A stretch of 64,000 bases of DNA, from IMG/VR virus record IMGVR_UViG_3300042887_005053, positions 62,001-126,000 of that record; one strand, given 5' to 3'. The notes under the pieces are model-generated. The model did not search any database, was not told where the DNA came from, and worked only from the letters and a program-made list of their open reading frames with translations. Shown in pieces: positions 11,301 through 46,275 of the stretch. The number at the start of each line of letters is the position of its first letter. Position 1 is the first letter of the stretch. The translations under genes were made by a program, and so were the position numbers.

Positions 11301-12297
11301 GATTCAACAACCTAATGGCCAATTTGAAGATGTTTCTATACAATATTCAACTGGTGTATTTAGAGAGGATGTTGACTACAAATATATTTATATAACAGAA
11401 GAATCTAAAAAATTAGTAGATGAAGCAAAAAAATACGAAGAAGAAGGTGACCTAAACAAAGCAGTAAGTTTGCTTGAAGATGCTGCTAAATTAGATCCAA
11501 ATAATTCATTTATTTTTGATAAGTTAGAACAACTTAAAAAGTTATCTGAGTTAATGAGAACTAATCCTATATTTGATTTTTTACTGAATATTGTTACTCT
11601 ACCCCTGAAGGTCATATTCAATGTAGTTGAATATATTATGAATTTTTTCAAATCTCTAACAAATCCATTTGAGTTACCAGGAGCGATTGCTGAATTTGTT
11701 TCATTCAAATGGTTAAAGGATTTGTTTGACCCAACAAGTAAAAAGAGTATGTTTGCACTGGCTGGTATATTATTTGATGTTCCAACTTTTACTAAAGAGT
11801 GGTTACCTAGTTTAATATCTGGTTCAAAAAACGAATTTGATTTCAATAAAATTATCAAACTTCCTTGGGTCATGAGACTTCCTAAATTTAGTTTAGAACA
11901 GTTTAGATTTTTGACATTTGGATACTATGGTAAACCAACTCCAAATTTGATACCTCTTCAGATGTTAAATGCAATTCTATCTTTAATTGAAAAAATAATA
12001 AATGCTTTTATAGATTTTGTCTGGAGTCTTTTAGGATTAGGTGCAATAATTGATCCACCCTATGTCAGACTAACGAGAGATTTTAATTTAGCAGAAAATA
12101 TGAGTCCAAAAGATATTTTGGATTTACTATCAGGTAATTATAAAGATCCAAACAGTGAAGAAAATTCAAATAAAGAGTACAACTTTGCTTATGAAATTAA
12201 GGCACCTGATGGTAGAGATATTAGAGATTTGAACTACGAAGAGTTACAAAAATGGGTAGATGAGAATAAAAACCTGCAATTTGTTTATAACTTTTAA
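8383..12297 (+). CDS. Large putative structural protein with one TPR-like helix pair and amphipathic helical ends
   Basis: 1304 aa; TAATATATA at 8370; EEEGDLNKAVSLLEDAAKLDPNN is TPR-like; internal repeat YSTGxFxxxVDYxYIY occurs twice. Confidence 0.55.
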   Translation: MALVNFSIPNIPSFKSTTPSPKPILFVPDVEKLIKFAQGDLGIADSIRTSMIVTNIAKCTDPFQLESFLKAAGGKLKNPIESYFQDGRLTFDPSDLSIDPKPGDLGGLKSLEKALFQSIFDTQKPYVEIIKLVTENLVKIEDIVARVLAAGGSSMKPADNPKALGYKGNSEVAQSMFKLQSLAKPSTSNQNQNQNQDQNVESNTPEEKTAEVLPPGFSYATQSILYSTGEFDPTVDYTYIYKDFKDDSIVLPDGTASATANQDDEKPKVVVFGIFDSTWKPLQSSFIDTPIQTANSNGTVQKNVNWLKRSNKWFNKFDQYVEGTDFSYQTDADGNIIYYGSNEGPSVTLEGETKYVKEGFPKLSVKNGLISSYRNYYIDETRIKLSKREDLSVQERQNIISEIGKTIDKTDSTGIPNLQNVIEGNLKNSFCSITNENNTPGLPADFITNAKFPFKPKKITYNSKEVWIDPEAQYDLKIIKCDSSIDIKYLDIEGDSSKTVSTQILRFVKKSLVIRLSNDENFDYILTGTTDTIPLQDNTNEFVLDNHSDSSAYSIEIRQSKIPNEYSDGISWDEIIGNTTTGNRFTLTTSNGTSRLSISFLDSQVQNPTFNDSYILPNGKKFFVDDSGVLLYTEIYNGSLSDYLPSNLEKNTVIINMSDFSLTETRGIIPPNLIRVKDTNYKFGKLISNTQITNEQLVTTNPYSKNGLYGTPNIKNQNIEQIYRYMITEDDTETYYIVEGILSSDNKQKLNAPNGGSSTNASGNSPDSGDYSLPDVVGAFPIFIEMLVDIFSKLIPLINQFINTIKNPTQIVFNIIVAKMGDAFGTEAPKFGFFSSDFLNDLRKLRKIEDDDVTERAKKMREFVNNSKLFNYVNIDENANPRFILDGIATVKLFGDAPGLSSLPGIKFGIESNLTSLASSDPKEPFKLVFQGPTVNTLKSIPELSGLVANLENLKSSALSNVNLEPKLEIPSEIQQPNGQFEDVSIQYSTGVFREDVDYKYIYITEESKKLVDEAKKYEEEGDLNKAVSLLEDAAKLDPNNSFIFDKLEQLKKLSELMRTNPIFDFLLNIVTLPLKVIFNVVEYIMNFFKSLTNPFELPGAIAEFVSFKWLKDLFDPTSKKSMFALAGILFDVPTFTKEWLPSLISGSKNEFDFNKIIKLPWVMRLPKFSLEQFRFLTFGYYGKPTPNLIPLQMLNAILSLIEKIINAFIDFVWSLLGLGAIIDPPYVRLTRDFNLAENMSPKDILDLLSGNYKDPNSEENSNKEYNFAYEIKAPDGRDIRDLNYEELQKWVDENKNLQFVYNF

Positions 12298-12743
12298 CGA
12301 TAGACCTCTATCATTTTTTCAACATGTCTTATAATCCAAGGCTCAACAACTGGTAATTGATTTAAGAAATCTAATTCATAGTTATAAGCTCTAAATTCTT
12401 CTAATTTCGGATCAATCAATATTTTTTCATTGTACACAAAAAGGTGATATGATTCATGTACAATTAAAGATGATATATTTGTTATTGAATTAATCTTCAG
12501 GTCTTTTGTATTTATAACAATCGTATTTGGAGGAAATGTTGTTGAAGAAGTGCCAATTATATAATCGATATTCTTGCAATACTTCACAACCATATTATAT
12601 TTTACCTCGTCATATCTCTTTATTAGGTAGAGAGCACTATCGACTTTTTGCTTGTAATTACTGACATCACTTATCTTTATTTGTGAGAATAAATTAAGTG
12701 TATTAAGTAATAAAATTAAAATTATGGCATTTTTGATATACAT
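12294..12743 (-). CDS. Exported zinc metallopeptidase-like protein
   Basis: Signal peptide ending ..FSQ; LIVHESYH (HExxH) and downstream EEFRAY. Confidence 0.65.
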   Translation of the reverse strand: MYIKNAIILILLLNTLNLFSQIKISDVSNYKQKVDSALYLIKRYDEVKYNMVVKYCKNIDYIIGTSSTTFPPNTIVINTKDLKINSITNISSLIVHESYHLFVYNEKILIDPKLEEFRAYNYELDFLNQLPVVEPWIIRHVEKMIEVYR

Positions 12744-13177
12744 TCTTGAACTCCTTTTTTGATTGCCGATGAAACAGTAGTTTTAGAAAATGGAACTTTT
12801 CCATCTGTTAATTCAATAAATGAAGCTCTGACTTCTGTATCTGATTCTCCTATACCTTCATATATCTGATCTTTGTGATAGAACCTAATACCAACCTGAG
12901 TTATTTGATTTGTTTTTTCCATGCCACCTATTCTTAAAGATTTTTTAGGAACACCAAAGTAGAAAACTTCAATTTTAATTGGAGAACCATCATCTGATAA
13001 GCAATATTTGTTTGACAGCTCATCTTCAGCCATTTGCTTAATACCGAAACAGATGTTCCTGTTGCCAAGTTCTTTAACCTTGGCAGTAGAATAAACTGTG
13101 TCAATAAAAACACAATCTTGTGCATAAAATATATTTGTAATTAAGATAACTAAGATTGATAAAATAATTTTTTTCAT
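12722..13177 (-). CDS. Exported protein, short paralog of the CsgG-like protein
   Basis: Signal peptide ending YAQ; aligns by eye with 16818..17540. Confidence 0.6.
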   Translation of the reverse strand: MKKIILSILVILITNIFYAQDCVFIDTVYSTAKVKELGNRNICFGIKQMAEDELSNKYCLSDDGSPIKIEVFYFGVPKKSLRIGGMEKTNQITQVGIRFYHKDQIYEGIGESDTEVRASFIELTDGKVPFSKTTVSSAIKKGVQECISKMP

Positions 13178-13186
13178 TTCTATTTG

Positions 13187-14896
13187 TTAATTTTGTTTTC
13201 CAGTTTTTATTAGGTAAAAATTAGTAGTTCCGTTATTAACTGGTGATTGTATTGTTACTGTTTGTGACCCAGGTATTGTATTTCTGAGATCTGTATTACT
13301 ATTTTGTATTGTAGACCACTCAGATGTAGTAAATATTCTATAGTTAGGTAAAGGACTTATCCAGCTAGTGAATCTATCATTTATTCTTGCATAAATGTAA
13401 TAACTATCACTTACACTAATCTTACCATCATTGTTGACATCAAATAGATAAAATGATTTAGATGTAGGATTTATTGATCCTAAGACAATAGAAGATGTAG
13501 ATTGAAAATCTAAGACTGATGGTTTGTCAATCGTAAGATTCGAAATTTCAAAATAATATTCTGTCATAGGATTACTTGGTTTACTGATTGTGTATTTACC
13601 AGTCAAATCTGTATAGACTGTTTCATCAAGTATCCAAGAACTAGTCGTTATGATATTATCAAATTCTATAACATAGTTTAATGATACATAATCTGGTAGA
13701 TCGTTCCAAAGACCACCACCAACAAACTGTGCGTAATTTTCACCTCCTGAGTTGTTTGGTTCTCCTCCGTTCCAGTTATTATAAATAGTTCTTCCAAATC
13801 GAGCTTGTGATTTCATGAATACTCTTTTAATTTCATCATCAGTAAGAGCGACATTGTGTACCTCAAATCTACCTATTCTACCGTCAAAAAATAAACCAGA
13901 TCCCATATTTGTAACATCAGAACCAGCTAAGAAATAATGTAAACCGTTTCCATTTGCATATGGTGTTTGTCTTGAAAAGGCAACTTGTGAGAAATAAATA
14001 CCATTAAGATATCCTTTAAGAGTTGTACCAGAATATGTTAATGTTACCATGTTCCAACTTCCCACCGAAATCGTTGTTGATATTTGACTAATACCACTAC
14101 CATTCCAAAGACCAAGTCTTAGAGTTGCTGTCGTTCCATTTGAACCAGTGACTTCGATGTTTGAATCATGCCAACCGGAATTGATTGATTGTGCTCCTCT
14201 TTCTGAGACTATTACGCCGTTACCCCAAGCAAGTACCCAAATGTTTAGAGTAAGATCTTTAGATGATACTGGAAAATTTGCGGCTAAATTTCTAGTAGCC
14301 ATATATCCTTGTGGATTAGCTGCACCACCAGTATTGAAGAACATAAAGTCTCCTAATAAGGTTGAGTATCCATATCCATTTGTTTGACTTCTAAAGAGAT
14401 CGGCGTGAACTGTACCTGATAAGTTATTAACAACAGTACCACTACCACTGTAAGATCTATTTACACTGAAATCATAATCAGCTACTTTTCCTCTAGTTAC
14501 ATCAGATTCTGTCCATGACCATCCACCACTTGGCTCAGAGTAGTAGTCTGATGTGACATCTTGTGAATATCCTATCCAACCAGAGGGCCAAGTATTGAAT
14601 AAGAATGAGTTTTCACTTGCATCTGAGATAGTGGCTAGATGACCATTCATGGACTCACAGATTGTCTTGGAATTAGTCCAAGTATTAGTTGTTGTTGAAC
14701 GATAGTATGAGTGTCCGTTATAGTTTGTTTGAGCTGTAAATCCAGTCAGATTAGATGTGGTTCTTTTGTATATTTTTACTGGTATACCTGATACACCAAC
14801 ACCATCCTGATTGTAAATATATCCAGAATAGTTTAAATTTTGTGAAAAAACTATTGAGTGAAGTAATAAAAGAAGTAATAAATTTAGTATTTTCAT
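13187..14896 (-). CDS. Exported C-type lectin / LamG / dockerin-like protein
   Basis: Signal peptide; CTL motifs (GHSYY, GHLATI, WIG, GEPNN, WND); LamG-like core; DVNNDGKISVSD Ca-binding loop. Confidence 0.75.
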   Translation of the reverse strand: MKILNLLLLLLLHSIVFSQNLNYSGYIYNQDGVGVSGIPVKIYKRTTSNLTGFTAQTNYNGHSYYRSTTTNTWTNSKTICESMNGHLATISDASENSFLFNTWPSGWIGYSQDVTSDYYSEPSGGWSWTESDVTRGKVADYDFSVNRSYSGSGTVVNNLSGTVHADLFRSQTNGYGYSTLLGDFMFFNTGGAANPQGYMATRNLAANFPVSSKDLTLNIWVLAWGNGVIVSERGAQSINSGWHDSNIEVTGSNGTTATLRLGLWNGSGISQISTTISVGSWNMVTLTYSGTTLKGYLNGIYFSQVAFSRQTPYANGNGLHYFLAGSDVTNMGSGLFFDGRIGRFEVHNVALTDDEIKRVFMKSQARFGRTIYNNWNGGEPNNSGGENYAQFVGGGLWNDLPDYVSLNYVIEFDNIITTSSWILDETVYTDLTGKYTISKPSNPMTEYYFEISNLTIDKPSVLDFQSTSSIVLGSINPTSKSFYLFDVNNDGKISVSDSYYIYARINDRFTSWISPLPNYRIFTTSEWSTIQNSNTDLRNTIPGSQTVTIQSPVNNGTTNFYLIKTGKQN

Positions 14897-14898
14897 AA

Positions 14899-16818
14899 TT
14901 AAAGTATAAATCTTGTGCCCATTAATATTGTGTAGTTTAGAACATTTTCTTTAATAGCATATGCTCCTCCTATATTTATATTAAATTTAAATGTCTTTGT
15001 AATTGAAATATTCGTTCCAACAATAGGTAAAATAACATGAGGTGATTTTAGAAGAATATCATTATAATATTTTACATAAGGTGCATATACATAAAGTCCA
15101 ATAAGTTTTACATCAAATCTCTGATTGACTTTCCAATCATACATGGATCCTGCTATAAAAGCAGTACCAATAAATTTATTTTCATAAACATTCCCATAAG
15201 AGGTGGTAACTAAATAAACTAATTTTAAATTTTGTGGTTTCTGAAACTTCCACATTTGACCAATTGCTAGGGTTCCATATATAGACTTCTTCGCATCTAA
15301 TCCAAATGTAACTGATGTACAAGCAAGATCAATTCTTTTTTCAGTTAAGTTTGCATAAAATCCCATAACATTTGGACCTTTAATTGAGCTAGTATAATCA
15401 GCCATAATGCCATGAACTTTAAGTCCATCCCATCTCATAGATGTATAACCGCCAGAGATTTTTGTTCCATATTTTATATCATTATTTTGAAAATTGAATC
15501 CAGCATAATCACTAGCCAAGATAACAGTAGGTTTACCATTATTTGATGTTGACTTTTCGACAGAGTTAACTGAATTACCAACAACATTCACGGATCCACC
15601 ACCTTTTTCTTCAGCTTTGTTTTCTGTTGTATTGTCACCGGGTAATTGTTCACTTTTCTTTAGTTCACCATTCTGAGATGTTCCATTATTAGAGTTTGTC
15701 GTATTCGAACTATTTTCTGATGACTGATTGTTATTAGTATTTGAAGAATTATTCGGATTCTGAGATGTTGAATTGTTATTTGCAGTTGATGAATTATTTT
15801 GAGGTGACTGGTTGTTTGTATTGTTAGCAGAATTCTGAGATGATTGAGTATTAGTATTTGATGAGTTACTTTGAGATGATGTATTATTCGACTGCTGATT
15901 AGTATTGGTATTTAATGAATTTGAAGAGTTATTCGATGACTGATTACCATTAACAGTTGTTTGATTATTATTAGGATTTTGAGTATTACTGGTCTGATTA
16001 TTACTCTGATTATTAGTTTGGTTGTTGTTAGGATTTTGAGTATTAACGGTCTGATTATTACTCTGATTATTAGTTTGGTTATTAGTTTGATTATTATTAG
16101 AATTTTGACTACCAGATTGATTATTAGTCTGTAAATTACTATTTTGTTGACTATTTGTAGTTTGATTAGTGTTATTAGTCGTTGTATTTTGATTATTCGA
16201 ACTATTATTAGTAGAATTTGAGTTACTAGATTGTTGTGAATTACTCGAATTTGAGCTACTCTGATTTGTTGAATTTGATTGTTGATTGATGTTATTATTT
16301 TTGTTATCTGAATCACCACTCATCTCAATCCCGGTATTTTGACTTTCGTTATTTTTCTTTTTTGATTCTTCACTTTTACTAGTACCATTCAATGTGGCAT
16401 CTAAAAGATTCATGCTACTATTTCTCATATTAGCGGCGTCTTGAACCGCTGAGAGTGAGTTTAATATACTTATGAAATTAAGTGCTGTGGTTTGTCCAAT
16501 ATTTATAGCAGTAGGTAGTCCTACAATACTCGCACAAGGATTATTACCACCAAATGAATTATAAACATCATCTGCCCAATTCTCAAATGATCCATTGTAG
16601 AAGTCATTTGATTGAAATGTTTGAATCTGACCATAGTAAGAGACTGTTATTCCATTACTGGGTACACTTAGAGTTTTCTTGACACCGGTACAAGGATCGA
16701 TATAAGAATATTGAAATGTTGATTGTGAAAAAGTGGTGAAATTTAAAAAAGAAAATAGTAAGGTAATTAATACGCCTATTACCTTACTATTTTTTCTTTT
16801 GAATTTCTCATATAACAT
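14899..16818 (-). CDS. Exported protein with long N/Q/S/T-rich region and C-terminal beta-barrel-like domain
   Basis: Signal peptide; about 210-aa polar low-complexity tract; alternating beta-strand pattern ending YTILMGTRFIL. Confidence 0.65.
   Translation of the reverse strand: MLYEKFKRKNSKVIGVLITLLFSFLNFTTFSQSTFQYSYIDPCTGVKKTLSVPSNGITVSYYGQIQTFQSNDFYNGSFENWADDVYNSFGGNNPCASIVGLPTAINIGQTTALNFISILNSLSAVQDAANMRNSSMNLLDATLNGTSKSEESKKKNNESQNTGIEMSGDSDNKNNNINQQSNSTNQSSSNSSNSQQSSNSNSTNNSSNNQNTTTNNTNQTTNSQQNSNLQTNNQSGSQNSNNNQTNNQTNNQSNNQTVNTQNPNNNQTNNQSNNQTSNTQNPNNNQTTVNGNQSSNNSSNSLNTNTNQQSNNTSSQSNSSNTNTQSSQNSANNTNNQSPQNNSSTANNNSTSQNPNNSSNTNNNQSSENSSNTTNSNNGTSQNGELKKSEQLPGDNTTENKAEEKGGGSVNVVGNSVNSVEKSTSNNGKPTVILASDYAGFNFQNNDIKYGTKISGGYTSMRWDGLKVHGIMADYTSSIKGPNVMGFYANLTEKRIDLACTSVTFGLDAKKSIYGTLAIGQMWKFQKPQNLKLVYLVTTSYGNVYENKFIGTAFIAGSMYDWKVNQRFDVKLIGLYVYAPYVKYYNDILLKSPHVILPIVGTNISITKTFKFNINIGGAYAIKENVLNYTILMGTRFIL
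15680..16300 (-). repeat. Asn/Gln/Ser-rich coding low-complexity repeats
   Basis: Repeated NNQT/NNQS units and two copies of NNNQTNNQSNNQTxNTQNPNNNQT-type units; boundaries approximate. Confidence 0.85.
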
Positions 16819-17540
16819 TATGACCTAAAAATACCTTTTTTGATCATTCTTGAAACTATTCTCGAAGAAGCCGTCTCAAGTGACTTTTTCGTAGTTATAC
16901 CAATAGTTGATTGATTGAACTTTACTTCTGTGTCATCTACTCCATCTAATATTGAAGCAGTTTTAATTGTACTAGCTTCACCTAATCCAGAACCAACTAT
17001 TACTTCTCCAGTTTCAGCATCAACAAATTTTACTTGTAGACCCAATCTAGTTGTCTGTGTAGTCTTCGATTCGCCATTTATCTTTACAACCTCATCCTCT
17101 GAGACCGAAAAGTCATAAACTTCAATATAAACAAAGTATTCAGCAAGTTTTATTTTACCTCTACCATCAACTTTATTTTCGGTGAATCCTTTATCAGATG
17201 CTTTGAATTGATTGACCATTCTTTCTTTTATTTCAAGTTTATCTTCAGTGAAAACAAATCTACCAGTATATTCTAAATACTCAAGTACTATGTTTGTAAC
17301 ACCAAGACCAACTCTTTTGTCTTTCAATTCTGGGTACATTGAATATAACTCTTCATTGATTCCGATTTTTAATAATTGAATTGGAATAACTATTGAATCA
17401 GTATAGTCTGATACCACATCTATAGATTGTTGTTTCTCAAAAGCAGCTTGGTATTGCTCAGTCTTAACACTACCGACAGGCTGAGCAATACTAGCTATTG
17501 AAAAAATCATATAAATTAAGAGTAAGCCTAATTTTTTCAT
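16818..17540 (-). CDS. CsgG/HfaB-family exported protein
   Basis: Signal peptide; L..TGRFVFTE, AEYFVYIEVYDF, LQVKFVDAETGEVI pattern typical of the CsgG fold. Confidence 0.7.
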   Translation of the reverse strand: MKKLGLLLIYMIFSIASIAQPVGSVKTEQYQAAFEKQQSIDVVSDYTDSIVIPIQLLKIGINEELYSMYPELKDKRVGLGVTNIVLEYLEYTGRFVFTEDKLEIKERMVNQFKASDKGFTENKVDGRGKIKLAEYFVYIEVYDFSVSEDEVVKINGESKTTQTTRLGLQVKFVDAETGEVIVGSGLGEASTIKTASILDGVDDTEVKFNQSTIGITTKKSLETASSRIVSRMIKKGIFRS

Positions 17541-17548
17541 TTTATTAA

Positions 17549-18100
17549 TTAATTTTGTTCTTCATCTGTTACATCACCACTGAAGTCTCTAGGTTCTTGA
17601 TAGTTAGGCTCTTCTTCTACATATGTGTCAGTAGTATTCTCTTCAACAAATGTATTTGTCTCTTGAGTTGGCTCATTCACTACTGTAGATTCAGAAGGTG
17701 TTGGTACATAAGATGCCTGAGATGTTGGTGGAGTTGGTGTCTTAGGTGAAGTGTATTCAGCAACATTTGATAGACTGTTACCGTCTTCTTCGTCAACTTT
17801 CTGAATCAACATTTTATCTCTGTCTTCTGAATTGAACCAATAATCAACAACTTTATTTAAGTTACCAACAAATGCACCTAATAATATAAGTAACATTTCT
17901 TTCCAGTTCTCTTGTATTTCCACACTGAAAAATACTGCTGAGTTTATACCAGCTATTATGAAGAAGAATAGAAATAATACAATTACCGTGATTCTCCATC
18001 TGTTAGCTTGCATTTGTTGTAACATATAGTAGAATCTATTTTTATCCTCTACTTTTACATATCCAGTTTCTCCGAATACTGTTCTTTTGAATTTTGACAT
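17549..18100 (-). CDS. Two-TM membrane protein with acidic P/T/E-rich tail
   Basis: Two hydrophobic helices (ITVIVLFLFFFIIAGI; MLLILLGAFVG). Confidence 0.65.
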   Translation of the reverse strand: MSKFKRTVFGETGYVKVEDKNRFYYMLQQMQANRWRITVIVLFLFFFIIAGINSAVFFSVEIQENWKEMLLILLGAFVGNLNKVVDYWFNSEDRDKMLIQKVDEEDGNSLSNVAEYTSPKTPTPPTSQASYVPTPSESTVVNEPTQETNTFVEENTTDTYVEEEPNYQEPRDFSGDVTDEEQN

Positions 18101-18117
18101 AGTTTTAATTTATTTTT

Positions 18118-18447
18118 TTACCAAGGAGAATCTTCGGTCTCACTTTTTTTCTCTTGCTTTTTCTCTACTGGCTTTTCAACAACAGTTTCTTTGATGATTG
18201 TTGTTGTACCACCGGATTTTTGTTGTTGTGTGTTCTCTTGATTTTGTTGAACATTTACAACTACTGGAGCAGGAGCTGGTTGTACTTGTTCAGTCTTAGT
18301 AGATTCTTCATCATCTGAGTGTCCACCGAATAGGGTTGTTGAGATCCATACTCCGCCTCCGGCGATTACTGTTGTTAAAGTACCAATGATAGTCTTTTTT
18401 AGACCTGACCAAGTACCATCGTTTGTCTCTTGTGTTTCTTCTGACAT
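18118..18447 (-). CDS. Single-TM membrane protein
   Basis: TIIGTLTTVIAGGGVWIS hydrophobic segment; Q/P-rich tail. Confidence 0.6.
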   Translation of the reverse strand: MSEETQETNDGTWSGLKKTIIGTLTTVIAGGGVWISTTLFGGHSDDEESTKTEQVQPAPAPVVVNVQQNQENTQQQKSGGTTTIIKETVVEKPVEKKQEKKSETEDSPW

Positions 18448-18456
18448 AATTTTAAT

Positions 18457-20382
18457 TTATTTTTTTATTATTTTACAAGTTTGTGATTGTGAATTAGCTT
18501 TCATATTTGCAAAGTACAAACCACTTGAAAAATTCGATATATTATCTTGATAGATATATTTACCAGCTGGCATATCCTGATTTATAATCATCTGATTAGT
18601 GACACCGTTCGGATCTGAAATATAAATCAAGACCGCTCCTGCATTTTTTACTTCAAACTCCAATGTTATCTCTCCAGTTGTTGGATTTGGATAAACTTGA
18701 AAAACTTGATCGTTCTGACCAGCAACTTTAGTGACAACCACAACACCATTTGAAGGGTTAATATTTAAATCTTTTGAAAATTCATTTCCTGAGAACTTTC
18801 TTGTTGTAAATAATGGTGAAAAATCCCAGTCACTTTGAGGTTGTTTAGCTAAAAATCTTAGTGTAAAGATTTGATCATCATTATTAACTAAATACTCTAG
18901 TTCAGCTGTTGGGTCATATCCACCCCATTCAATAGTATTATCTCTAGTATTTAAGAATGTCAACCACATCATAGTTTTCTCAGAATTCAAAATATCTTTG
19001 AACTCAAGAATTTCAGGATTATACATTACAGCAAGTTGTAAAGAAGATACTTGTTCACCATTAGTTAAAACTTTAACTGGTACTTCAACTAAGTTTCCTT
19101 CACTAACAGTGAGACTCGGCATATTTATTTCTATATCAGATGTTGGAAAATCGTACTGAACTCTTAAATCAATAACATTCTCTGTTGCTGATGGATATTC
19201 TGGGTGGTTTACTTCAACATTTATTGGTGTCAAACGAGCCATGTGGAAACCAGTACCATTTGCATCACCAGGAACTAAAACATAAAATTGAACTGAACTT
19301 GGTTGACCAGGTAAAATATTATACACAAAGTTTGTAACACCTGATATAGAAGATGTATAGTTATTTGTTGGATTTGTAGTAATAGTATTAAACTCTGTTT
19401 GTGTAAAAAACTTTATATCAGATGTAGAGTTAGGCCAAGTTGTAAATCTACCAGCAATTCTACCAAATACGCCATAAGCATCACTAATGGTTACATTGTT
19501 ACTTGAGTTCACATCAGCACTGTAAAAATCAAATCCAGATGGATTAGATGTGCCTAAAACCCATTGATTGATCAACTCAGCATCTGCAGTTGAAATTACA
19601 TTACCAACATTCATAGTGTCTCCTTGAACTGAAATCCTTACATCAAAGAATGTGGTATCGATTGATTCATTAAAAGAAAAATAACCATCTACATTTGTAG
19701 TGTATGTATCATGTATAGACCAAACGCTACCTGTTTTTGGTTTCTTTTCTAAAGCAACAGATAAATTCTTAGCACCAGATCCAGTAACATTTGTGAATGT
19801 GCCTGAAAAATTCAAAGTGTGTAAAAGAAAGTTACCACCATAATTATGTAAACTAAGAGGTAGATCGAAACCTGGTTGAGTCGCAACATAACTTGTGTAG
19901 TTATTAGTTGGTATTAAAGTCGTCCAACTAAGATTGTTTATACTTGTTATATTTGTAAATATAGAACTCTCAACATGCTCAAAGGTCAATTGGAATGTTT
20001 CTCCATTTGATAAACTAAAAGTGCTACTATTACCGGTATAAACTAAAGTAATTGTTATATAACCTTGAGCATTGTTGTCTACATATTGTAAATAAAGATT
20101 CGATGAAGACCCAACTAAATTTACACTACAAGATGTAAAAGCTGTGTTATCATAGAACACTCTAAACTGAGTACCTGTTGTTAAAGTAGTTGTAGTATTT
20201 TGTAGGGTTATCAAAGCAACTGTTTGGCCTTGATTAGTAGTACCAACTGTATAGTTAGTATCGATAATAGCCCAAATGCCATTACTTGGCGCAGGTGGTC
20301 CACTTTGTGAGTAAAGTGAAACTGGTAATGTAGACAACAATGTCAAGATTACCACCGAAAGGACGGATTTCAGTAGTTTCAT
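18457..20382 (-). CDS. Cohesin/dockerin-like protein with T9SS C-terminal sorting domain
   Basis: Signal peptide; two cohesin-like domains (QFRVFYDNT; VEVPVKV..SLQLAVMYNPEILEF); DVNSSNNVTISD; C-terminal VYPNP...GLYF...KIIKK. Confidence 0.8.
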   Translation of the reverse strand: MKLLKSVLSVVILTLLSTLPVSLYSQSGPPAPSNGIWAIIDTNYTVGTTNQGQTVALITLQNTTTTLTTGTQFRVFYDNTAFTSCSVNLVGSSSNLYLQYVDNNAQGYITITLVYTGNSSTFSLSNGETFQLTFEHVESSIFTNITSINNLSWTTLIPTNNYTSYVATQPGFDLPLSLHNYGGNFLLHTLNFSGTFTNVTGSGAKNLSVALEKKPKTGSVWSIHDTYTTNVDGYFSFNESIDTTFFDVRISVQGDTMNVGNVISTADAELINQWVLGTSNPSGFDFYSADVNSSNNVTISDAYGVFGRIAGRFTTWPNSTSDIKFFTQTEFNTITTNPTNNYTSSISGVTNFVYNILPGQPSSVQFYVLVPGDANGTGFHMARLTPINVEVNHPEYPSATENVIDLRVQYDFPTSDIEINMPSLTVSEGNLVEVPVKVLTNGEQVSSLQLAVMYNPEILEFKDILNSEKTMMWLTFLNTRDNTIEWGGYDPTAELEYLVNNDDQIFTLRFLAKQPQSDWDFSPLFTTRKFSGNEFSKDLNINPSNGVVVVTKVAGQNDQVFQVYPNPTTGEITLEFEVKNAGAVLIYISDPNGVTNQMIINQDMPAGKYIYQDNISNFSSGLYFANMKANSQSQTCKIIKK

Positions 20383-20516
20383 AATATAAATATTTTTTTA
20401 TGACTTATATATTTTCATTTTAAAACAAAAAAGAATTCGCTATCTAAATTTTAGAAAATAAACCAACTTTTATTTTAAAAAAGTATATAAAGTCAAAATT
20501 TAATAAATTTATAATA

Positions 20517-20756
20517 ATGAGTAAAGGTAAAAAAGCCAAAGAGCACCGTAGAAAAGTAATGTTGAGAAACGAAAGAATCAAACATGAAAAAAGAAAAATG
20601 CAAAAAGCTCAACAAGAAATGTTGATGAAATTGATCGAACAAGAGAAAGAAAAAGGATCATTCGATGCTCCGGTAATGTCTATGCCAGGATTTGAAGGAC
20701 CAAATCTAGGATTAGATACTAATTCAACTGAGACTGTTACAGGACCACAAATATAA
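20517..20756 (+). CDS. Small basic hypothetical protein
   Basis: 79-aa ORF; AAC-N18-TATAAA motif upstream. Confidence 0.55.
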   Translation: MSKGKKAKEHRRKVMLRNERIKHEKRKMQKAQQEMLMKLIEQEKEKGSFDAPVMSMPGFEGPNLGLDTNSTETVTGPQI

Positions 20757-20922
20757 GATCGAGTAGACTTGACTTTTTAGAAGGTGTTAGATTATTTTCT
20801 AACGCCTTTTTTATTTTGAGATTCAAATAACTTCTGATCTTATCAGATTTTTCTTTATCGTGTTTACACAGAGTAAGATATTTATCAACAGTTAAGATAG
20901 AGTTAATTTGTTTGTTTTTCAT
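20737..20922 (-). CDS. Small hypothetical protein
   Basis: 61-aa ORF filling an intergenic gap, A-rich upstream. Confidence 0.4.
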   Translation of the reverse strand: MKNKQINSILTVDKYLTLCKHDKEKSDKIRSYLNLKIKKALENNLTPSKKSSLLDLIFVVL

Positions 20923-20972
20923 TGTATAAACATTTTGTGTAAGTCTATATATAAATAAAAAAATTAAAAAAA

Positions 20973-22052
20973 TTGAATACTAAACTAAATATCAATATTG
21001 ATAAAGAAGATCATAACTTAAATGATTACTTATACTGTTGGCATATATTCAAAGAAAGACCCAACAGACTAAATATATTTGACAACTTTGACTCAAAGTC
21101 ATTTACTGAATTCATTAGTAATAAAGAAGTTAAAATTGAATCTTCTTTCTCTGATATTGCTCGTTCTCAATCTGGTGAATTCGTAATAAACGAGAGAAGA
21201 CTTTTGAAATATGATGATTTCATTTTCATCTCATATGTAGAAGTTGATAAAATGTCAACATTAGAAGAAAGTTTAATAACAGATGTATCAATTATCTACT
21301 CAAGTTCAATCGAGATATCTAAGATAAATGATTTGATAAATGAGTTAAACAACTTCTCTGTTGTAGAAGAGTCTGAAGAAGTAGAGGAATCAAAAGTTTC
21401 TGCTGTAACATTTACACCAAATGGTTTAGATACTCTTTCTATATCACTAATACAAGCTGACTATGATAATATTGATTTCTACTATAATGATGATACTATT
21501 AAAGAGTCAGATAAACTAATTAAAATACTAAAGAAAAAATCAAAAAGTTTAAGCTTAGTTTTTGGTGATAGAGGTAACGGTAAGACAACGCTACTTAATT
21601 ACATAAGTTCAAAGATTAAAAAGAATGTTATTTTTATTCCATTAAATCTGATAGAAAGTACAATCAACAATCCTGACTTCCGAAATTTCATTACAAGTCA
21701 CTCTAATTCAATTTTAGTAATTGAAGATTTAGATAACTATTTATTGAACTCAAAATCAACTTATTTCATAAACAATCTATTACAACTAGTTGATGGATTT
21801 CAGTCAGATGATTTAAAACTTCATATTTTATGTAGTGTTAATGTCGACAACATTGATGAAATAGATGAAAATCTTCTTCAGTGTAATAATATTGGAAAGA
21901 TAATTGAAATAAAAAGATTAGAGGCCGACAAAGTAGATGAGTTATGCAAACATTTAGGTCAAAAAAATAAGTTCAAATCTTCACAAAGAGTTGTGGATGT
22001 TTTAAGAAACAATAAAACTAAAGAACCAATTACTGAGATTGGATTCAATTAA
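20973..22052 (+). CDS. AAA+ ATPase family protein
   Basis: Walker A GDRGNGKTT, Walker B ILVIED, LLQLVDG. Confidence 0.8.
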   Translation: MNTKLNINIDKEDHNLNDYLYCWHIFKERPNRLNIFDNFDSKSFTEFISNKEVKIESSFSDIARSQSGEFVINERRLLKYDDFIFISYVEVDKMSTLEESLITDVSIIYSSSIEISKINDLINELNNFSVVEESEEVEESKVSAVTFTPNGLDTLSISLIQADYDNIDFYYNDDTIKESDKLIKILKKKSKSLSLVFGDRGNGKTTLLNYISSKIKKNVIFIPLNLIESTINNPDFRNFITSHSNSILVIEDLDNYLLNSKSTYFINNLLQLVDGFQSDDLKLHILCSVNVDNIDEIDENLLQCNNIGKIIEIKRLEADKVDELCKHLGQKNKFKSSQRVVDVLRNNKTKEPITEIGFN

Positions 22053-26691: not shown

Positions 26692-28080
26692 ATGAAAAAG
26701 TATTCTGAGACCTTTATCAATAATTCTGATATTCTAAAGTTAGCTAAAATAGGTTTTGAGTTCGAGTTTTTTATGAAAGATTTATCTTACTATAAAACTA
26801 TGGAATTGTTGAATCAATATCTATCACCAGTAAAAGTCTGGGGATTTAGACAATACCACTCAGATTTTACACCTGACTCACAGAATTTCAAAATTGAACC
26901 AGATTTATCGGGTGGTGCAAACATGGTTGAGTTAGTAACTGGACCTTTACAATATTTTGAAGCAAAATATTTCTTAGTAAAAATTTTGAAATTTATACAA
27001 GAATATGGATTTACAAATGAAAAATGTTCAATACACTTCAATATATCATTTATAGATGAAGCAGACAAAAATCTAAACGATCTGAATGTATTAAAGTTGA
27101 TTCTAAGTGTTGATGAAGATGAGATTTATAGAGTTTACCCATCAAGAAAAAACAATGTTTATGCTAAAACTATAAAGAAAGTTATTCCTTTCAAAGACTA
27201 TGATTTTAATAATATTGGTATTGATGTAGTCAAAAATAATCTAAGACTACCAAATGATAAGTATTATGGTGTGAATTTCTTGCATATAAATAATCCGAAA
27301 CAAACTCAGAGATTAGAATTCAGATATATTGGAGGCAAAGACTATGAGAAGAACATTGGTCAAATAAATTACTTCTTAGATAGATTTATACTCGATGTTT
27401 ATTCGTCAATTGACGCTGGATTTACGAATGAAGACATTCAAGATTTAGAGAAGTATTTAGATGAAAATATCACTAACTTCAAAAATTTCTCTAAATACGA
27501 TAGTTTTATCGTAGACTTTCCAAGTATCTCTTTACAGATTGACCAAAACTATGGATATGATATTGTAAACGCTTATTATGATAGAGTCTATAGTAAGTTA
27601 TACACACTTTTAGATTCTACAGATTCTCTTAAAGATTGTATAATAAACTATGTAACATCTACTCAGAGAGTTGAGATTATTGATGGAAATATTAAATCAA
27701 CTCAAAATATATCAAATTATGATTTTATAAATTGCACAATCAGTGATGGTATTTTTGAAAACTGTCATTTTATCAACTCAGACATAACCAACTCACAAAT
27801 AATAAAGTCAAAAGTTCACGGATCGGAATTAACGAAGACAAAAGTTCTTAACTGTTCGGTTGAATCATCAGAACTAAAAGATTGTTTCTTTATGAATGGT
27901 TATTTAAATGCAGATATGTATGGTGGTGTATTTAGAAGTGGTAAACTTGGTCCATATGCAAATATTAGCTCAGAAACTAAAATAGTTCAAGAAGATGGTA
28001 ATTTCTTTGATACAACATTTGATGATGATAGATATGATATTAAAAAAGACCAAGGTGTTATCAAAGCCTTCAAAAAATAA
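26692..28080 (+). CDS. Putative amidoligase (COOH-NH2 ligase) with C-terminal beta-helix-like repeats
   Basis: IGFEFEF, ELVTGPL, CSIHFNIS, KYYGVNF, RLEFRYIGG; then N/C/S pentapeptide-like repeats. Confidence 0.7.
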   Translation: MKKYSETFINNSDILKLAKIGFEFEFFMKDLSYYKTMELLNQYLSPVKVWGFRQYHSDFTPDSQNFKIEPDLSGGANMVELVTGPLQYFEAKYFLVKILKFIQEYGFTNEKCSIHFNISFIDEADKNLNDLNVLKLILSVDEDEIYRVYPSRKNNVYAKTIKKVIPFKDYDFNNIGIDVVKNNLRLPNDKYYGVNFLHINNPKQTQRLEFRYIGGKDYEKNIGQINYFLDRFILDVYSSIDAGFTNEDIQDLEKYLDENITNFKNFSKYDSFIVDFPSISLQIDQNYGYDIVNAYYDRVYSKLYTLLDSTDSLKDCIINYVTSTQRVEIIDGNIKSTQNISNYDFINCTISDGIFENCHFINSDITNSQIIKSKVHGSELTKTKVLNCSVESSELKDCFFMNGYLNADMYGGVFRSGKLGPYANISSETKIVQEDGNFFDTTFDDDRYDIKKDQGVIKAFKK

Positions 28081-46228: not shown

Positions 46229-46275
46229 AGGATATATATTAATTTTCTTGTACCTTATGACCAAAAAGAAATACG

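What the first reader, a model, noticed from the sequence alone, without database searches (positions are those of the whole stretch)
12294..20382. Eight-gene phage operon for a host cell-surface complex (T9SS cohesin/dockerin, CsgG-like, N/Q-rich barrel, lectin, peptidase)
Seen: eight tightly packed minus-strand genes. Six have Sec-type signal peptides, most with a predicted cleavage before Gln (a Bacteroidota trait), and two are membrane-anchored. Parts: cohesin-dockerin-cohesin-T9SS CTD protein, two TM proteins, CsgG-like protein, N/Q/S-rich protein with barrel-like end, lectin-dockerin, second CsgG-fold protein, HExxH peptidase. Known: csgG-like genes occur in some marine myophages, and cohesin-dockerin pairs assemble multiprotein surface complexes. 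I do not know this combination as a described system. Inference: the phage builds an envelope-spanning, lectin-tipped adhesion or aggregation structure, or a superinfection or grazing shield, using the host T9SS.
Basis: partly seen in the sequence, partly recalled or inferred. Interest (0 to 1): 0.85.

Follow-up and report, generated by a model that had tools for sequence, protein, structure and literature searches.

The report
Phage operon remodelling host cell surface
An eight-gene operon, conserved in hundreds of huge aquatic phages and one cultured Flavobacterium phage, encodes exported proteins (a T9SS-secreted cohesin scaffold, a dockerin-tagged C-type lectin, two CsgG-fold proteins, a 12-stranded outer-membrane barrel, two membrane proteins, a small metalloprotease) that most likely rebuild the infected cell's surface; I found no description of such a viral system.

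Summary
Eight tightly packed minus-strand genes (12294-20382) sit on a huge-phage contig. Six carry Sec signal peptides with Gln at the predicted cleavage site, and they are the only such ORFs in the 64-kb window.

Domain calls that hold:
- T9SS type A CTD and one cohesin in g1.
- An X-dockerin-like module shared by g1 and g6.
- A C-type lectin with an EPN/WND sugar site in g6.
- g4 is a remote CsgG-superfamily member and g7 is its paralogue.
- The g5 C-terminus models as a 12-stranded barrel resembling autotransporter, FapF and NanC barrels.
- g8 keeps an invariant HExxH..EE motif.

Calls that do not hold: a second (N-terminal) cohesin in g1, and g4 as a membrane channel, because its hairpin-equivalent segments are short and charged.

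The module is syntenic in 80 or more viral contigs, in the cultured Flavobacterium phage immuto (gp013-019) and, diverged, in marine contigs. An endolysin lies beside it in 44 of 66 dereplicated relatives, though not here.

Best reading (confidence 0.45): a host-T9SS-dependent, cohesin-dockerin lectin coat on infected Bacteroidota cells, supported by a phage-made outer-membrane and periplasmic unit. The most likely effect is adhesion or aggregation. Receptor masking or a lysis-phase role remain open. I found no description of it, and it can be tested in culture.

The parts
18457..20382 (-). g1, 641 aa. Layout: signal peptide (Gln at +1), N-terminal domain of unknown fold, beta-sandwich plus dockerin-like module, cohesin, T9SS type A C-terminal domain.
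   Evidence: The length is conserved at 627-658 aa in about 80 loci.
19432..19824 (-). g1 residues 187-317: CarboxypepD_reg/transthyretin-like beta-sandwich followed by a dockerin-like Ca-binding segment (X-dockerin-like). It is homologous to the C-terminus of g6.
   Evidence: Dockerin_1 was found in 14/29 orthologues (best E 7.8e-5) and CarboxypepD_reg in 5/29. The PDB dockerin 4uyp_B matched at E 0.002. g1 and g6 cross-hit each other.
18748..19128 (-). g1 cohesin domain (residues about 419-545).
   Evidence: Pfam Cohesin scored 27.0 bits against a cut-off of 24.1. It was found in 26/29 orthologues, best E 9.5e-14. The PDB cohesin 6kg8_A matched at E 0.005.
18460..18696 (-). g1 T9SS type A C-terminal sorting domain (residues 563-641), with invariant P565-N566-P567 inside a YPNP motif.
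   Evidence: PF18962 scored 37.5 bits (cut-off 27) and TIGR04183 scored 34.9 bits (cut-off 23). It is present in 29/29 orthologues. P565, N566 and P567 are invariant columns; Y564 is the consensus residue only.
18118..18447 (-). g2, 109 aa. It has an acidic N-terminus, a conserved 'GTWSGLKKT' motif, a weakly hydrophobic Gly/Thr-rich membrane segment, a low-complexity tail and a conserved terminal Trp.
   Evidence: It is present in 77-81 loci and in phage immuto as gp016.
17549..18100 (-). g3, 183 aa inner-membrane protein with two hydrophobic segments and an acidic variable tail. The core (residues 20-107, window 17780-18043) is nearly invariant.
   Evidence: It is absent from immuto. In some relatives a non-homologous 2-TM protein of about 95 aa occupies the same position.
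16818..17540 (-). g4, 240 aa secreted protein of the CsgG/PelC/LptE-fold group. It is the best conserved gene of the module, and this copy has no lipobox.
   Evidence: Relatives are 69-87% identical in 214 viral contigs. The g4 profile matches distant lipoproteins at probability 100%, and those match E. coli CsgG at probability 96%, E 4.9e-9. The distant hits carry PF03783. The top 20 Foldseek hits are CsgG.
14899..16818 (-). g5, 639 aa. Layout: signal peptide, N-terminal domain with two invariant Cys (window 16444-16722), N/Q/S-rich variable spacer (about 15619-16371), 12-stranded outer-membrane beta-barrel (14902-15528).
   Evidence: The AF2 model of residues 395-639 has pLDDT 80.5, with 12 strands after a helix. 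Foldseek hits: autotransporter EstA E 1.9e-8, NanC, NalP, AIDA-I, Hbp, FapF.
13187..14896 (-). g6, 569 aa. Layout: signal peptide, C-type lectin domain interrupted by a LamG/ConA-like insert (13652-14704), then an X-dockerin-like C-terminal module (13190-13648). There is no T9SS CTD.
   Evidence: Lectin_C scored 32.9 bits and Laminin_G_3 scored 44.9 bits. Across the family, Lectin_C is in 24/33 and Laminin_G_3 in 11/33. The C-terminal profile hits the CipA X-dockerin 2b59_B at E 0.0065, plus other dockerins.
13700..13762 (-). g6 Ca2+/sugar-binding site of the C-type lectin: EPN (residues 379-381) and WND (residues 397-399).
   Evidence: The motif pair is present in 25 of 33 orthologues.
12722..13177 (-). 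g7, 151 aa secreted paralogue of g4 (a shortened CsgG-fold). Cys22 is invariant, and a second Cys lies near residues 58-60.
   Evidence: hhalign of A1 against A2 gave probability 96.9%, E 1.6e-10. It is present in immuto (gp019) and in the marine locus L088.
12294..12743 (-). g8, 149 aa secreted mini-metallopeptidase candidate. The invariant motif H96-E-S-x-H100-L...E115-E116...Y120...E123 lies at window 12396-12458.
   Evidence: It matches no Pfam, PHROG or PDB family and is absent from cultured phages.
20383..20516 (.). AT-rich 134-bp spacer between g1 and a divergent small ORF; presumed promoter region of the operon.
   Evidence: The sequence was read. No diagnostic motif was found. This assignment is an inference.

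Best explanation
This is a phage operon whose eight products all leave the cytoplasm of an infected Bacteroidota cell (Flavobacterium-like host) and remodel its envelope.

Shown:
- Six proteins have Sec signal peptides of the Bacteroidota 'Q-rule' type.
- g1 ends in a type A T9SS sorting domain and carries a cohesin.
- g1 and g6 share an X-dockerin-like module.
- g6 is a C-type lectin with an intact EPN/WND Ca2+-sugar site.
- g4 and g7 are paralogous members of the CsgG/PelC/LptE fold group.
- g5 ends in a 12-stranded outer-membrane barrel.

Inferred mechanism:
1. The host T9SS exports g1 and leaves it on the cell surface.
2. The g1 cohesin captures the dockerin of the lectin g6, and possibly that of another g1. 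This builds a multivalent lectin coat resembling a small cellulosome with lectins in place of enzymes.
3. g5 (barrel), with the periplasmic g4/g7 pair and the inner-membrane proteins g2/g3, forms the phage's own outer-membrane and periplasmic unit. This unit anchors the coat or helps the CTD-less partners across, by analogy with ring-plus-barrel pairs such as PelC-PelB and LptE-LptD.
4. g8 processes one of the components.

Most likely consequence: infected cells bind glycans on neighbouring cells or particles and stick to them. This would keep new hosts close to a large, slowly diffusing, low-burst phage.
For: Phage context:
- The window carries a baseplate hub, a tail lysin, a helicase and a primase.
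- An identical g4 lies on contigs of up to 411 kb.

Operon and export:
- The eight genes are tightly packed.
- They hold the only signal-peptide-plus-Gln ORFs in the window.

Domain evidence:
- T9SS CTD and cohesin score above the curated cut-offs and occur in 29/29 and 26/29 orthologues.
- Dockerin/X-dockerin is supported by the family profiles.
- EPN/WND is present in 25/33 g6 orthologues.

Anchor-plus-client architecture:
- The lectin cargo of g6 varies while its dockerin end stays constant.
- In the cultured phage immuto the cohesin+CTD is a separate protein with its own signal peptide, next to two dockerin-bearing proteins. This is the layout expected for an anchor with clients.

Outer-membrane and periplasmic unit:
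- g4 has the CsgG fold and g7 is its paralogue.
- The g5 barrel model has pLDDT 80.5, with top matches to autotransporter, NanC and FapF barrels.
- g4-g5-g7 is the invariant core, found also in a diverged marine module.

Host and distribution:
- The cultured relative infects Flavobacterium.
- The four genome hits are Bacteroidota MAG contigs.
- The module is syntenic in 80 or more loci.

Precedents:
- From my own knowledge: the T9SS-secreted lectin RemA of F. johnsoniae causes aggregation.
- T9SS cargo genes are often linked to outer-membrane barrel 'shuttle' genes (PMC12618676).
Against: - No physical interaction was tested.
- The dockerin calls are below the Pfam cut-off in the window copies (14.2 bits against 22.9).
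- g6 has no T9SS signal, so its route across the outer membrane is unknown.
- g5 shows no sequence similarity to PorV or PorP/SprF.
- The roles of g2, g3, g4, g5, g7 and g8 rest on analogy only.
- In 44 of 66 dereplicated relatives an endolysin lies next to the module, often under 100 bp away on the same strand. The position of g3 can be taken by a non-homologous 2-TM protein, which is holin-like behaviour. Both observations point toward lysis rather than adhesion.
- In immuto the module sits among DNA-metabolism genes, so its timing is unclear.
- No expression or phenotype data exist.
Confidence: 0.45

Rival explanations
1. Superinfection exclusion or receptor masking. The same lectin coat binds in cis to the host's own surface glycans or gliding adhesins that serve as phage receptors. 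Alternatively, the T9SS cargo clogs the translocon. Either way, competing phages cannot adsorb and progeny are not lost on cell debris.
For: - It uses the same architecture as the best explanation.
- The lectin part of g6 is the most variable piece of the module while the docking end is constant. This is expected if it tracks strain-variable surface glycans.
- Linkage to the endolysin fits a function that matters at or after lysis.
- From my own knowledge: Flavobacterium phage resistance often maps to gliding/T9SS surface components, and phage T5 Llp is a precedent for receptor masking.
Against: - No known exclusion system matched (PADLOC gave no hits).
- Seven to eight genes is elaborate for masking.
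- Nothing links the module to the phage's receptor-binding proteins.
- It has not been tested.
Confidence: 0.2
2. Lysis-phase module. g3 (or its positional analogue) and g2 act as holin/antiholin- or spanin-like membrane proteins for the neighbouring cytoplasmic endolysin. The g4/g7/g5 unit helps to breach or time the breaching of the Bacteroidota outer membrane. The lectin and scaffold proteins are passengers of the same late operon.
For: - An endolysin (PG_binding_1 + GH19, no signal peptide) is the commonest neighbour. It occurs in 44/66 dereplicated loci at a median 71 bp from the module, at either end and often co-oriented.
- A second cell-wall-enzyme-like gene of 196 aa occurs in 17 loci.
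- g3 has two TM segments and a charged tail, and in some relatives is replaced at the same position by a non-homologous 2-TM protein.
- g2 has a weak, Gly-rich membrane segment.
- The marine variant is interleaved with a GTA_holin_3TM gene and with proteins that combine a TM segment with what looks by eye like a coiled coil.
Against: - The window copy has no endolysin nearby.
- The cultured relative immuto lacks g3 and g8 altogether and keeps the module 5.7 kb from its endolysin, among early-type genes.
- Several loci have an adjacent endolysin but no g3-type gene in the module.
- No canonical spanin features were found: there is no small lipoprotein, and no coiled coil was noted in g2 by eye.
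- A T9SS-exported cohesin scaffold and a Ca-dependent lectin have no obvious role in lysis.
Confidence: 0.15
3. A curli/Fap-like polypeptide or amyloid secretion device. CsgG-fold proteins plus a FapF-like gated 12-strand barrel and a protease would export an N/Q-rich or other unfolded substrate to form fibres, as proposed for the csgGF clusters of pelagimyophages.
For: - g4 and g7 belong to the CsgG superfamily.
- The g5 barrel matches FapF at E 9e-6 to 4e-5.
- g5 has an N/Q/S-rich region.
- There is a secreted protease candidate (g8), as FapD is in Fap systems (my own knowledge).
- Phage csgGF clusters exist (PMC7029224, PMC9004378).
Against: - No CsgA/B/E/F or Fap subunit homologues were found.
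- The g4 segments equivalent to the CsgG membrane hairpins are 4-6 residues shorter, 30-33% charged and lack an amphipathic beta signal. The window copy also has no lipid anchor.
- The N/Q-rich spacer varies from about 0 to 270 residues and is made of recent tandem repeats, so it is not a conserved functional core.
Confidence: 0.08
4. Ordinary virion decoration or tail-fibre accessory proteins that happen to carry lectin and Ig-like modules.
For: In this window the module lies next to large structural-looking genes (1304-aa protein, baseplate hub, tail lysin). Lectin and Ig-like modules are common on virions.
Against: - The six families have conserved Sec signal peptides with near-invariant Gln at the cleavage site.
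- A T9SS sorting domain is present in 29/29 g1 orthologues.
- g5 has an outer-membrane barrel.
- None of the eight matches a PHROG structural family.
- Virions assemble in the cytoplasm.
Confidence: 0.03

Closest known systems
Phage-encoded curli-like csgG-csgF clusters of pelagimyophages (HTVC008M type) and methylophage Melnitz (PMC7029224, PMC9004378)
   Same: Both are phage-borne. Both have a CsgG-superfamily gene inside a small cluster of secreted or hypothetical envelope proteins. The function is unknown in both cases, and 'sibling capture', a pore and lysis timing have been proposed.
   Different: Those genes are recognisable CsgG and CsgF, of proteobacterial type, in phages of SAR11 and OM43. 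Here g4 misses the Pfam CsgG model and lacks a lipobox and hairpin-like segments. There is no CsgF. The cluster adds a T9SS cargo, cohesin/dockerin modules, a C-type lectin, a 12-strand barrel and a second CsgG-fold paralogue. The hosts are Bacteroidota.
Cellulosome-type cohesin-dockerin assemblies (for example Clostridium thermocellum CipA X-dockerin with an anchoring cohesin; PDB 2b59, 3kcp)
   Same: Both have a cohesin domain on an anchoring protein and X-module-plus-dockerin on client proteins. One protein carries both, like an adaptor scaffoldin. The Ca-binding loop DxNxDGxxxxxD is conserved.
   Different: The clients are lectins and not enzymes. The anchor is a T9SS C-terminal domain instead of SLH modules or sortase. 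The system is encoded by a virus. Only one canonical Ca loop is evident, and binding has not been tested.
T9SS surface adhesins and their outer-membrane shuttles in Flavobacterium johnsoniae (RemA lectin adhesin; PorV; PorP/SprF-type barrels; PMC12618676)
   Same: Both have a Sec signal plus a type A CTD cargo. Both have a lectin function on the cell surface. In both, a cargo gene is linked to a gene for an outer-membrane barrel.
   Different: g5 has no detectable similarity to PorV or PorP/SprF, and its barrel resembles autotransporter, NanC and FapF barrels. The lectin itself lacks a CTD and would have to dock.
Ring-lipoprotein plus barrel outer-membrane export pairs (PelC-PelB, LptE-LptD) and CsgG itself
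   Same: The g4 model matches CsgG, FlgT, PelC, GNA1162 and LptE. g4 is always followed directly by the barrel gene g5, overlapping it by 1 bp here.
   Different: The window copy of g4 has no lipid anchor. No polysaccharide- or LPS-pathway genes are present. Oligomeric state and partner have not been tested.
Type Va autotransporters and the Fap amyloid channel FapF
   Same: g5 has a signal peptide, an N-terminal domain, a long linker, a helix and a C-terminal 12-strand barrel. Top fold hits are EstA, NalP, AIDA-I, Hbp and FapF.
   Different: g5 matches no Pfam autotransporter model. The pre-barrel helix has low confidence. Two invariant Cys 52 residues apart in the N-domain argue against passage through a 12-strand pore (inference). 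No Fap partners are present.
Holin-endolysin-spanin lysis cassettes
   Same: Small membrane proteins lie next to a cytoplasmic endolysin in most relatives, and a 2-TM protein shows non-orthologous replacement.
   Different: The endolysin is not adjacent in this window. No canonical spanin pair is present. Most of the module (lectin, scaffold, barrel, CsgG-fold pair) has no counterpart in lysis cassettes.

Membership tests
T9SS type A cargo (g1) | N-terminal Sec signal peptide | tested here: met
   There is a hydrophobic N-terminus followed by YS|Q. Gln26 is nearly invariant.
T9SS type A cargo (g1) | C-terminal Por_Secre_tail / TIGR04183 domain above the curated cut-off | tested here: met
   PF18962 scored 37.5 bits (cut-off 27) and TIGR04183 scored 34.9 bits (cut-off 23). 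It is in 29/29 orthologues. P565, N566 and P567 of the YPNP motif are invariant.
T9SS type A cargo (g1) | Host possesses a T9SS and secretion depends on it | not testable with these tools
   Indirect evidence only. The cultured relative infects Flavobacterium, and the genome hits are Bacteroidota MAG contigs.
Cohesin-dockerin complex (g1, g6) | Cohesin domain | tested here: met
   Pfam Cohesin scored 27.0 bits against 24.1. It is in 26/29 orthologues, best E 9.5e-14. PDB cohesins matched at E 0.005. A second, N-terminal cohesin is not detectable.
Cohesin-dockerin complex (g1, g6) | Dockerin with duplicated Ca-binding loop-helix repeats | tested here: inconclusive
   The window g6 scored 14.2 bits against a cut-off of 22.9. 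Dockerin_1 is found in 14/29 g1 orthologues and 4/33 g6 orthologues. PDB dockerin and X-dockerin hits have E 0.002-0.007. One canonical loop is conserved; the second is not evident.
Cohesin-dockerin complex (g1, g6) | Ca2+-dependent physical binding of the two modules | not testable with these tools
   No multimer prediction or assay was available.
C-type lectin (g6) | CTLD profile match | tested here: met
   Lectin_C scored 32.9 bits against 22.6 and is found in 24/33 orthologues, best E 3.5e-17. The domain is split by a LamG insert.
C-type lectin (g6) | EPN/QPD plus WND Ca2+-sugar site | tested here: met
   EPN lies at 379-381 and WND at 397-399. The pair is present in 25/33 orthologues.
CsgG curli channel, PF03783 (g4, g7) | Significant match to the CsgG family | tested here: inconclusive
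   There is no direct Pfam hit, and the direct profile comparison with E. coli CsgG is not significant. The transitive route does work: the g4 profile matches distant lipoproteins at probability 100%. Those carry PF03783 at up to 63.7 bits and match E. coli CsgG at probability 96%. The top 20 Foldseek hits are CsgG at E 6.5e-7, but the model is poor (pLDDT 56.7, TM 0.33). So g4 is a superfamily member, not a family member.
CsgG curli channel, PF03783 (g4, g7) | N-terminal lipobox Cys (outer-membrane lipoprotein) | tested here: not met
   The window g4 has no Cys. Only 15/64 orthologues have a lipobox-like motif. The invariant Cys of g7 is not in a lipobox context.
CsgG curli channel, PF03783 (g4, g7) | Two amphipathic hairpins that form the 36-strand barrel | tested here: not met
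   The equivalent g4 segments are 4-6 residues shorter, 30-33% charged and give no amphipathic beta signal, whereas CsgG does. The profile alignment stops before TM2. This is a sequence-level test only.
CsgG curli channel, PF03783 (g4, g7) | Partner genes csgE, csgF, csgA, csgB | tested here: not met
   No such Pfam or NCBIfam hits were found in the eight proteins.
Type Va autotransporter / 12-strand outer-membrane barrel (g5) | C-terminal 12-stranded beta-barrel | tested here: met
   The AF2 model has pLDDT 80.5 and pTM 0.72, with 12 strands. Foldseek hits: EstA E 1.9e-8; NanC and KdgM with TM 0.66-0.72. An amphipathic strand pattern is also seen.
Type Va autotransporter / 12-strand outer-membrane barrel (g5) | Match to the autotransporter beta-domain profile and a confident pore-filling linker helix | tested here: not met
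   No Pfam family matched in 37 family members. The helix before the barrel has pLDDT of only about 39-56.
HExxH zinc metallopeptidase (g8) | HExxH plus a downstream third ligand | tested here: met
   H96, E97, H100, E115 and E116 are invariant in 27-42 orthologues. The role of the third ligand is inferred from spacing.
HExxH zinc metallopeptidase (g8) | Match to a described peptidase family | tested here: not met
   The best hit was SprT-like at 13.4 bits against 25.6. There were no PHROG, NCBIfam or PDB hits.
Phage lysis cassette | Adjacent endolysin with holin and spanin genes | tested here: inconclusive
   No endolysin lies near the module in the window. One is adjacent in 44/66 dereplicated relatives. 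g3 and its analogue have a holin-like topology. No canonical spanin pair is present.

The most novel reading that the evidence does not exclude
The module is a self-contained, virus-encoded envelope machine. An autotransporter/FapF-like barrel, a ring of CsgG-fold proteins and inner-membrane partners would work together with the hijacked host T9SS. Together they would assemble a cohesin-dockerin 'lectinosome' on infected cells. This would be the first viral cohesin-dockerin complex and the first case of a phage feeding its own cargo into the T9SS. Huge aquatic phages would use it to glue infected cells to future hosts or to shield them.
Probability: 0.3. Interest if true: 0.85.

Novelty: new variant of a known kind. 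Interest (0 to 1): 0.7.

Why it matters
Huge phages of aquatic Bacteroidota are abundant, but most of their genes have no assigned role. This module is one of their best conserved non-structural gene sets. The g4 family alone has more than 6,400 protein clusters at 90% identity. The module recurs from freshwater 400-kb phages to marine contigs.

If the reading is right, it shows a virus loading its own cargo into a phylum-specific secretion system and using cohesin-dockerin assembly to change how an infected cell sticks to its surroundings. That would affect aggregation, particle attachment and phage transmission in lakes and seas.

It also supplies new protein families: a barrel family without Pfam or PDB relatives, a soluble CsgG-fold pair and a mini HExxH protease.

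The cultured phage immuto and its Flavobacterium host carry the core module, so the question can be tested directly at the bench.

Tried and rejected
Searches that found nothing:
- Megablast of the first 25 kb against GenBank phages gave no match.
- PHROGs gave no significant match for the eight proteins: one weak hit for g3 (phrog_38564, unknown function, E 0.0037), none for the other seven. PADLOC gave nothing.
- Pfam and NCBIfam gave nothing for g4, g5, g7 and g8.
- PDB sequence and profile searches gave nothing useful for g4, g7, the g5 C-terminus and g8.
- A homologue search with the g5 barrel profile returned only unnamed metagenomic proteins.
- Nine literature searches, plus term look-ups in individual papers, found no description of the module.

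Tests that came out negative or uninformative:
- The g4 profile against E. coli CsgG was not significant. An intermediate profile was needed.
- g1 residues 28-186 as a second cohesin was rejected.
- The 247-aa OMP-like neighbours as g5 paralogues were rejected.
- The sigma-70 promoter and terminator scan was uninformative. Bacteroidota and phage promoters are not covered by it.
- g3 as the obligatory holin of the neighbouring endolysin was weakened by loci with an endolysin but no g3 and by its absence from immuto.
- The helicase scan, done to compare conservation, was not decisive because the pattern search finds only close relatives.

- The first AF2 model of g4 was poor (pLDDT 56.7) because the alignment was shallow.
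- No multimer prediction was available.

Full report
1. WHAT IS THERE

The window is phage DNA with about 30% G+C. It holds a baseplate hub with a Phage_base_V domain, a 993-aa protein with an endolysin/GH19-like domain, a DNA helicase, a primase and an HNH endonuclease. Proteins identical to g4 lie on contigs of up to 411,545 bp. IMG/VR holds the same sequence on a 204-kb contig.

Between 12294 and 20382 there are eight minus-strand ORFs, with gaps of -22 to +17 bp. No convincing internal terminator was found. I call them g1 to g8 in the order of transcription.

2. EXPORT SIGNALS

g1 and g4-g8 begin with a hydrophobic signal followed by [A/S]-Q. In a scan of all 68 ORFs of 90 aa or more, these six were the only genuine cases. 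The carB hit in that scan is a nucleotide-binding loop. The chance of six out of six positives falling within eight given ORFs is about 3e-7 (hypergeometric, by hand).

The Gln is nearly invariant in the g1, g5, g6, g7 and g8 families. This is the Bacteroidetes Q-rule (PMC5837995), which has been noted before in Porphyromonas phage genes (PMC10367356).

g3 has one strong and one weaker hydrophobic segment. g2 has only a weak Gly/Thr-rich one.

3. THE PARTS

- **g1.** It scores above the curated cut-offs for the T9SS type A sorting domain and for cohesin. Among 29 orthologues, 29 have the sorting domain, 26 the cohesin, 14 a dockerin and 5 a CarboxypepD_reg sandwich. The family profile hits a solved dockerin, cohesins and CTDs. 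Its N-terminal 160 residues are not detectably a cohesin.
- **g6.** This is a C-type lectin split by a LamG insert. The EPN and WND motifs of the Ca2+-sugar site are kept in 25 of 33 orthologues. The other orthologues carry different binding modules, such as Ig_7, GEVED, PA14 and pentaxin. Its last 160 residues are conserved and homologous to the middle of g1. As a profile they hit X-module-dockerin structures of cellulosomal scaffoldins.
- **g4.** It has no Pfam hit. Its profile finds only 273 representative clusters in 1.84 billion proteins. The distant ones carry PF03783. g4 matches these distant lipoproteins with probability 100%, and they match E. coli CsgG with probability 96%. A low-confidence AF2 model still retrieves CsgG as its top 20 PDB matches, followed by FlgT, HpaA, PelC, GNA1162 and LptE. 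It also retrieves a phage CsgG in BFVD. However, the window copy has no Cys. Only 15 of 64 orthologues have a lipobox-like motif. The segments equivalent to the two CsgG membrane hairpins are shorter, 30-33% charged and not amphipathic. I therefore read g4 as a soluble or peripherally attached periplasmic protein of the CsgG/PelC/LptE fold group, not a channel.
- **g7.** It is a shortened paralogue of g4 (probability 96.9%).
- **g5.** It has an N-terminal domain with two invariant Cys. A spacer follows that ranges from almost nothing to about 270 N/Q/S-rich residues and contains tandem DNA repeats. The C-terminal domain has no Pfam or PDB sequence relatives. AF2 models that domain with confidence (pLDDT 80.5) as a helix followed by 12 strands. 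Foldseek places it with autotransporter translocators (EstA, NalP, AIDA-I, Hbp), NanC/KdgM and FapF.
- **g8.** It keeps H-E-S-x-H-L, E-E, Y and E invariant but fits no described peptidase family.

4. RELATIVES

The g4 search in viral contigs found 214 relatives at 69-100% identity, many on contigs of 150-430 kb. In the 80 loci fetched, all eight genes recur in the same order or with small rearrangements: g3 after g4, g7 before g6, or g8 inverted upstream. The flanking genes of the window do not recur.

Median identities are:
- g3 core: 83%
- g4: 74%
- g2: 60-65%
- g1 and the g5 barrel: about 50%
- g7 and g8: 42-47%
- g6: 38%

The only cultured carrier is Flavobacterium phage vB_FspM_immuto (160 kb, host Flavobacterium sp. 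LMO8). There gp013-gp019 correspond to g6, the N-terminal half of g1, the cohesin+CTD half of g1 with its own signal peptide, g2, g4, g5 and g7. g3 and g8 are missing from immuto.

A diverged module lies on marine TARA contigs. It holds a cohesin+CTD protein, a lipoprotein g4, a spacer-less g5, g7 and a g3-like gene.

Bacterial genomes gave only four hits, all on Bacteroidota MAG contigs. The core is therefore cohesin-CTD anchor, dockerin clients, g2, g4, g5 and g7, and it is a phage module.

Cellular relatives of g4 occur next to, or fused with, caspase-like and kinase domains. This shows that the fold is used outside channels.

In 66 dereplicated loci the commonest neighbour within 5 kb is a cytoplasmic endolysin (PG_binding_1 + GH19). 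It occurs in 44 loci at a median 71 bp from the module, at either end and often on the same strand.

A 196-aa gene with an L,D-transpeptidase-like SxGC motif and a metallophosphoesterase also recur.

Where g3 is missing between g2 and g4, a non-homologous 2-TM protein with an acidic tail can take its place.

The window copy has no endolysin nearby. In immuto the endolysin is 5.7 kb away and the module sits among DNA-metabolism genes.

6. MECHANISM

Shown: the products are exported. g1 is built as a T9SS cargo with a cohesin. g1 and g6 carry the same dockerin-like module. g6 has an intact lectin site. g4 and g7 share the CsgG-group fold. g5 ends in a 12-strand barrel.

Inferred: the host T9SS places g1 on the surface. 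Its cohesin captures the dockerin of g6, and perhaps of further g1 molecules, giving a multivalent lectin coat. The natural split of g1 in immuto, and the constant dockerin end paired with variable lectin heads in g6, fit an anchor-and-client design.

The g4-g5-g7 triad is always contiguous. By analogy with PelC-PelB, LptE-LptD and the barrel 'shuttles' genetically linked to T9SS cargo (PMC12618676), it would be the outer-membrane and periplasmic unit that anchors the coat or helps the CTD-less partners across. g2 and g3 would connect to the inner membrane, and g8 would act as a processing enzyme.

For the biological effect I favour adhesion or aggregation. A lectin on a Flavobacterium surface is known to aggregate cells (RemA; my own knowledge). 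Huge phages with small bursts would also gain from keeping hosts close, the same idea as the 'sibling capture' proposed for pelagimyophage curli genes (PMC7029224).

Receptor masking or superinfection exclusion uses the same structure and is nearly as likely. The endolysin linkage keeps a lysis-phase function alive. An amyloid-secretion role and a virion role are unlikely, for the reasons given under the rival explanations.

7. COMPARISON AND NOVELTY

Each element is known separately: T9SS cargo, cohesin-dockerin assembly, C-type lectins, CsgG-fold proteins, 12-strand barrels and phage csgGF clusters. I found no description of their combination in a conserved phage operon, or of any virus-encoded cohesin-dockerin set or T9SS cargo, in the literature I could search (term look-ups in single papers).

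I rate it a new variant of known kinds rather than categorically new. The function is unproven and the parts are recognisable.

Interest is 0.7. The module is widespread, well conserved and surprising in composition, and it can be tested directly with a cultured phage-host pair.

Noticed in passing
window 286-4097 (-): There is a carB-like gene (914 aa, phrog_29784 E 1e-286, about 47% identical to bacterial carbamoyl-phosphate synthase large subunits). An overlapping carA-like glutamine amidotransferase gene sits beside it on this huge-phage contig. This is a possible pyrimidine/arginine auxiliary metabolic pair. A close copy was found only on the identical IMG/VR contig.
   Followed up: partly
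loci L003-L084, within 3 kb of the module (e.g. L047:14870-15691, L021:6507-7337): A well conserved cytoplasmic endolysin (PG_binding_1 + GH19) lies next to the module in 44 of 66 dereplicated relatives, at either end. It is absent from the window copy.
   Followed up: yes
window 37231-38787 (+) and 32473-35454 (+); loci e.g. L021:15209-15799: The C-terminal 200 residues of the baseplate-hub protein are homologous to a free-standing 196-aa gene beside the module in relatives. That gene carries an 'SxGC' motif reminiscent of L,D-transpeptidase-type cell-wall enzymes. The 993-aa protein carries the GH19-like lysin domain, so it is probably a tail-associated lysin.
   Followed up: partly
loci L008-L017, L042, L053, L065-L067, between g2 and g4: Where g3 is missing, a non-homologous 2-TM protein of about 95 aa with an acidic tail occupies the same position. 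Non-orthologous replacement of this sort is typical of holins.
   Followed up: partly
L086:5675-10051 (NCBI GCA_029261835.1); proteins P0214, P0221, P0229, P0249: Distant cellular relatives of g4 are adjacent to, or fused with, caspase-like (Peptidase_C14/CHAT) or Ser/Thr-kinase domains. This suggests that the CsgG-like domain also serves as a periplasmic module in signalling or conflict systems.
   Followed up: no
window 15959-16104 and antisense ORF 15912-16319: The N/Q-rich spacer of g5 contains 57-bp (2.2 copies) and 12-bp (4 copies) tandem repeats. The 135-aa antisense ORF is an artefact of this low complexity.
   Followed up: yes
L003:14815-15558, L021:15796-16539, L081:4205-4948: A further secreted 247-aa protein ending in an OMP-like '...SLIF' signal sits directly beside the module in 13 relatives. 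It is unrelated to the g5 barrel. In L021, a 261-aa Pro-rich secreted protein follows g8.
   Followed up: partly
L090 (NC_055915.1) 20131-21325 and gp030: In phage immuto a small gene annotated as YcfL-like lipoprotein lies 3.5 kb downstream of the module. In E. coli, ycfL lies next to lpoB (my recollection, not checked here). LpoB's Pfam family was co-hit, mostly below its cut-off, by distant g4 relatives that carry the CsgG domain.
   Followed up: no
window 45116-46324 (-), 26692-28080 (+): There is an HNH/homing endonuclease gene and a pentapeptide-repeat protein gene.
   Followed up: no
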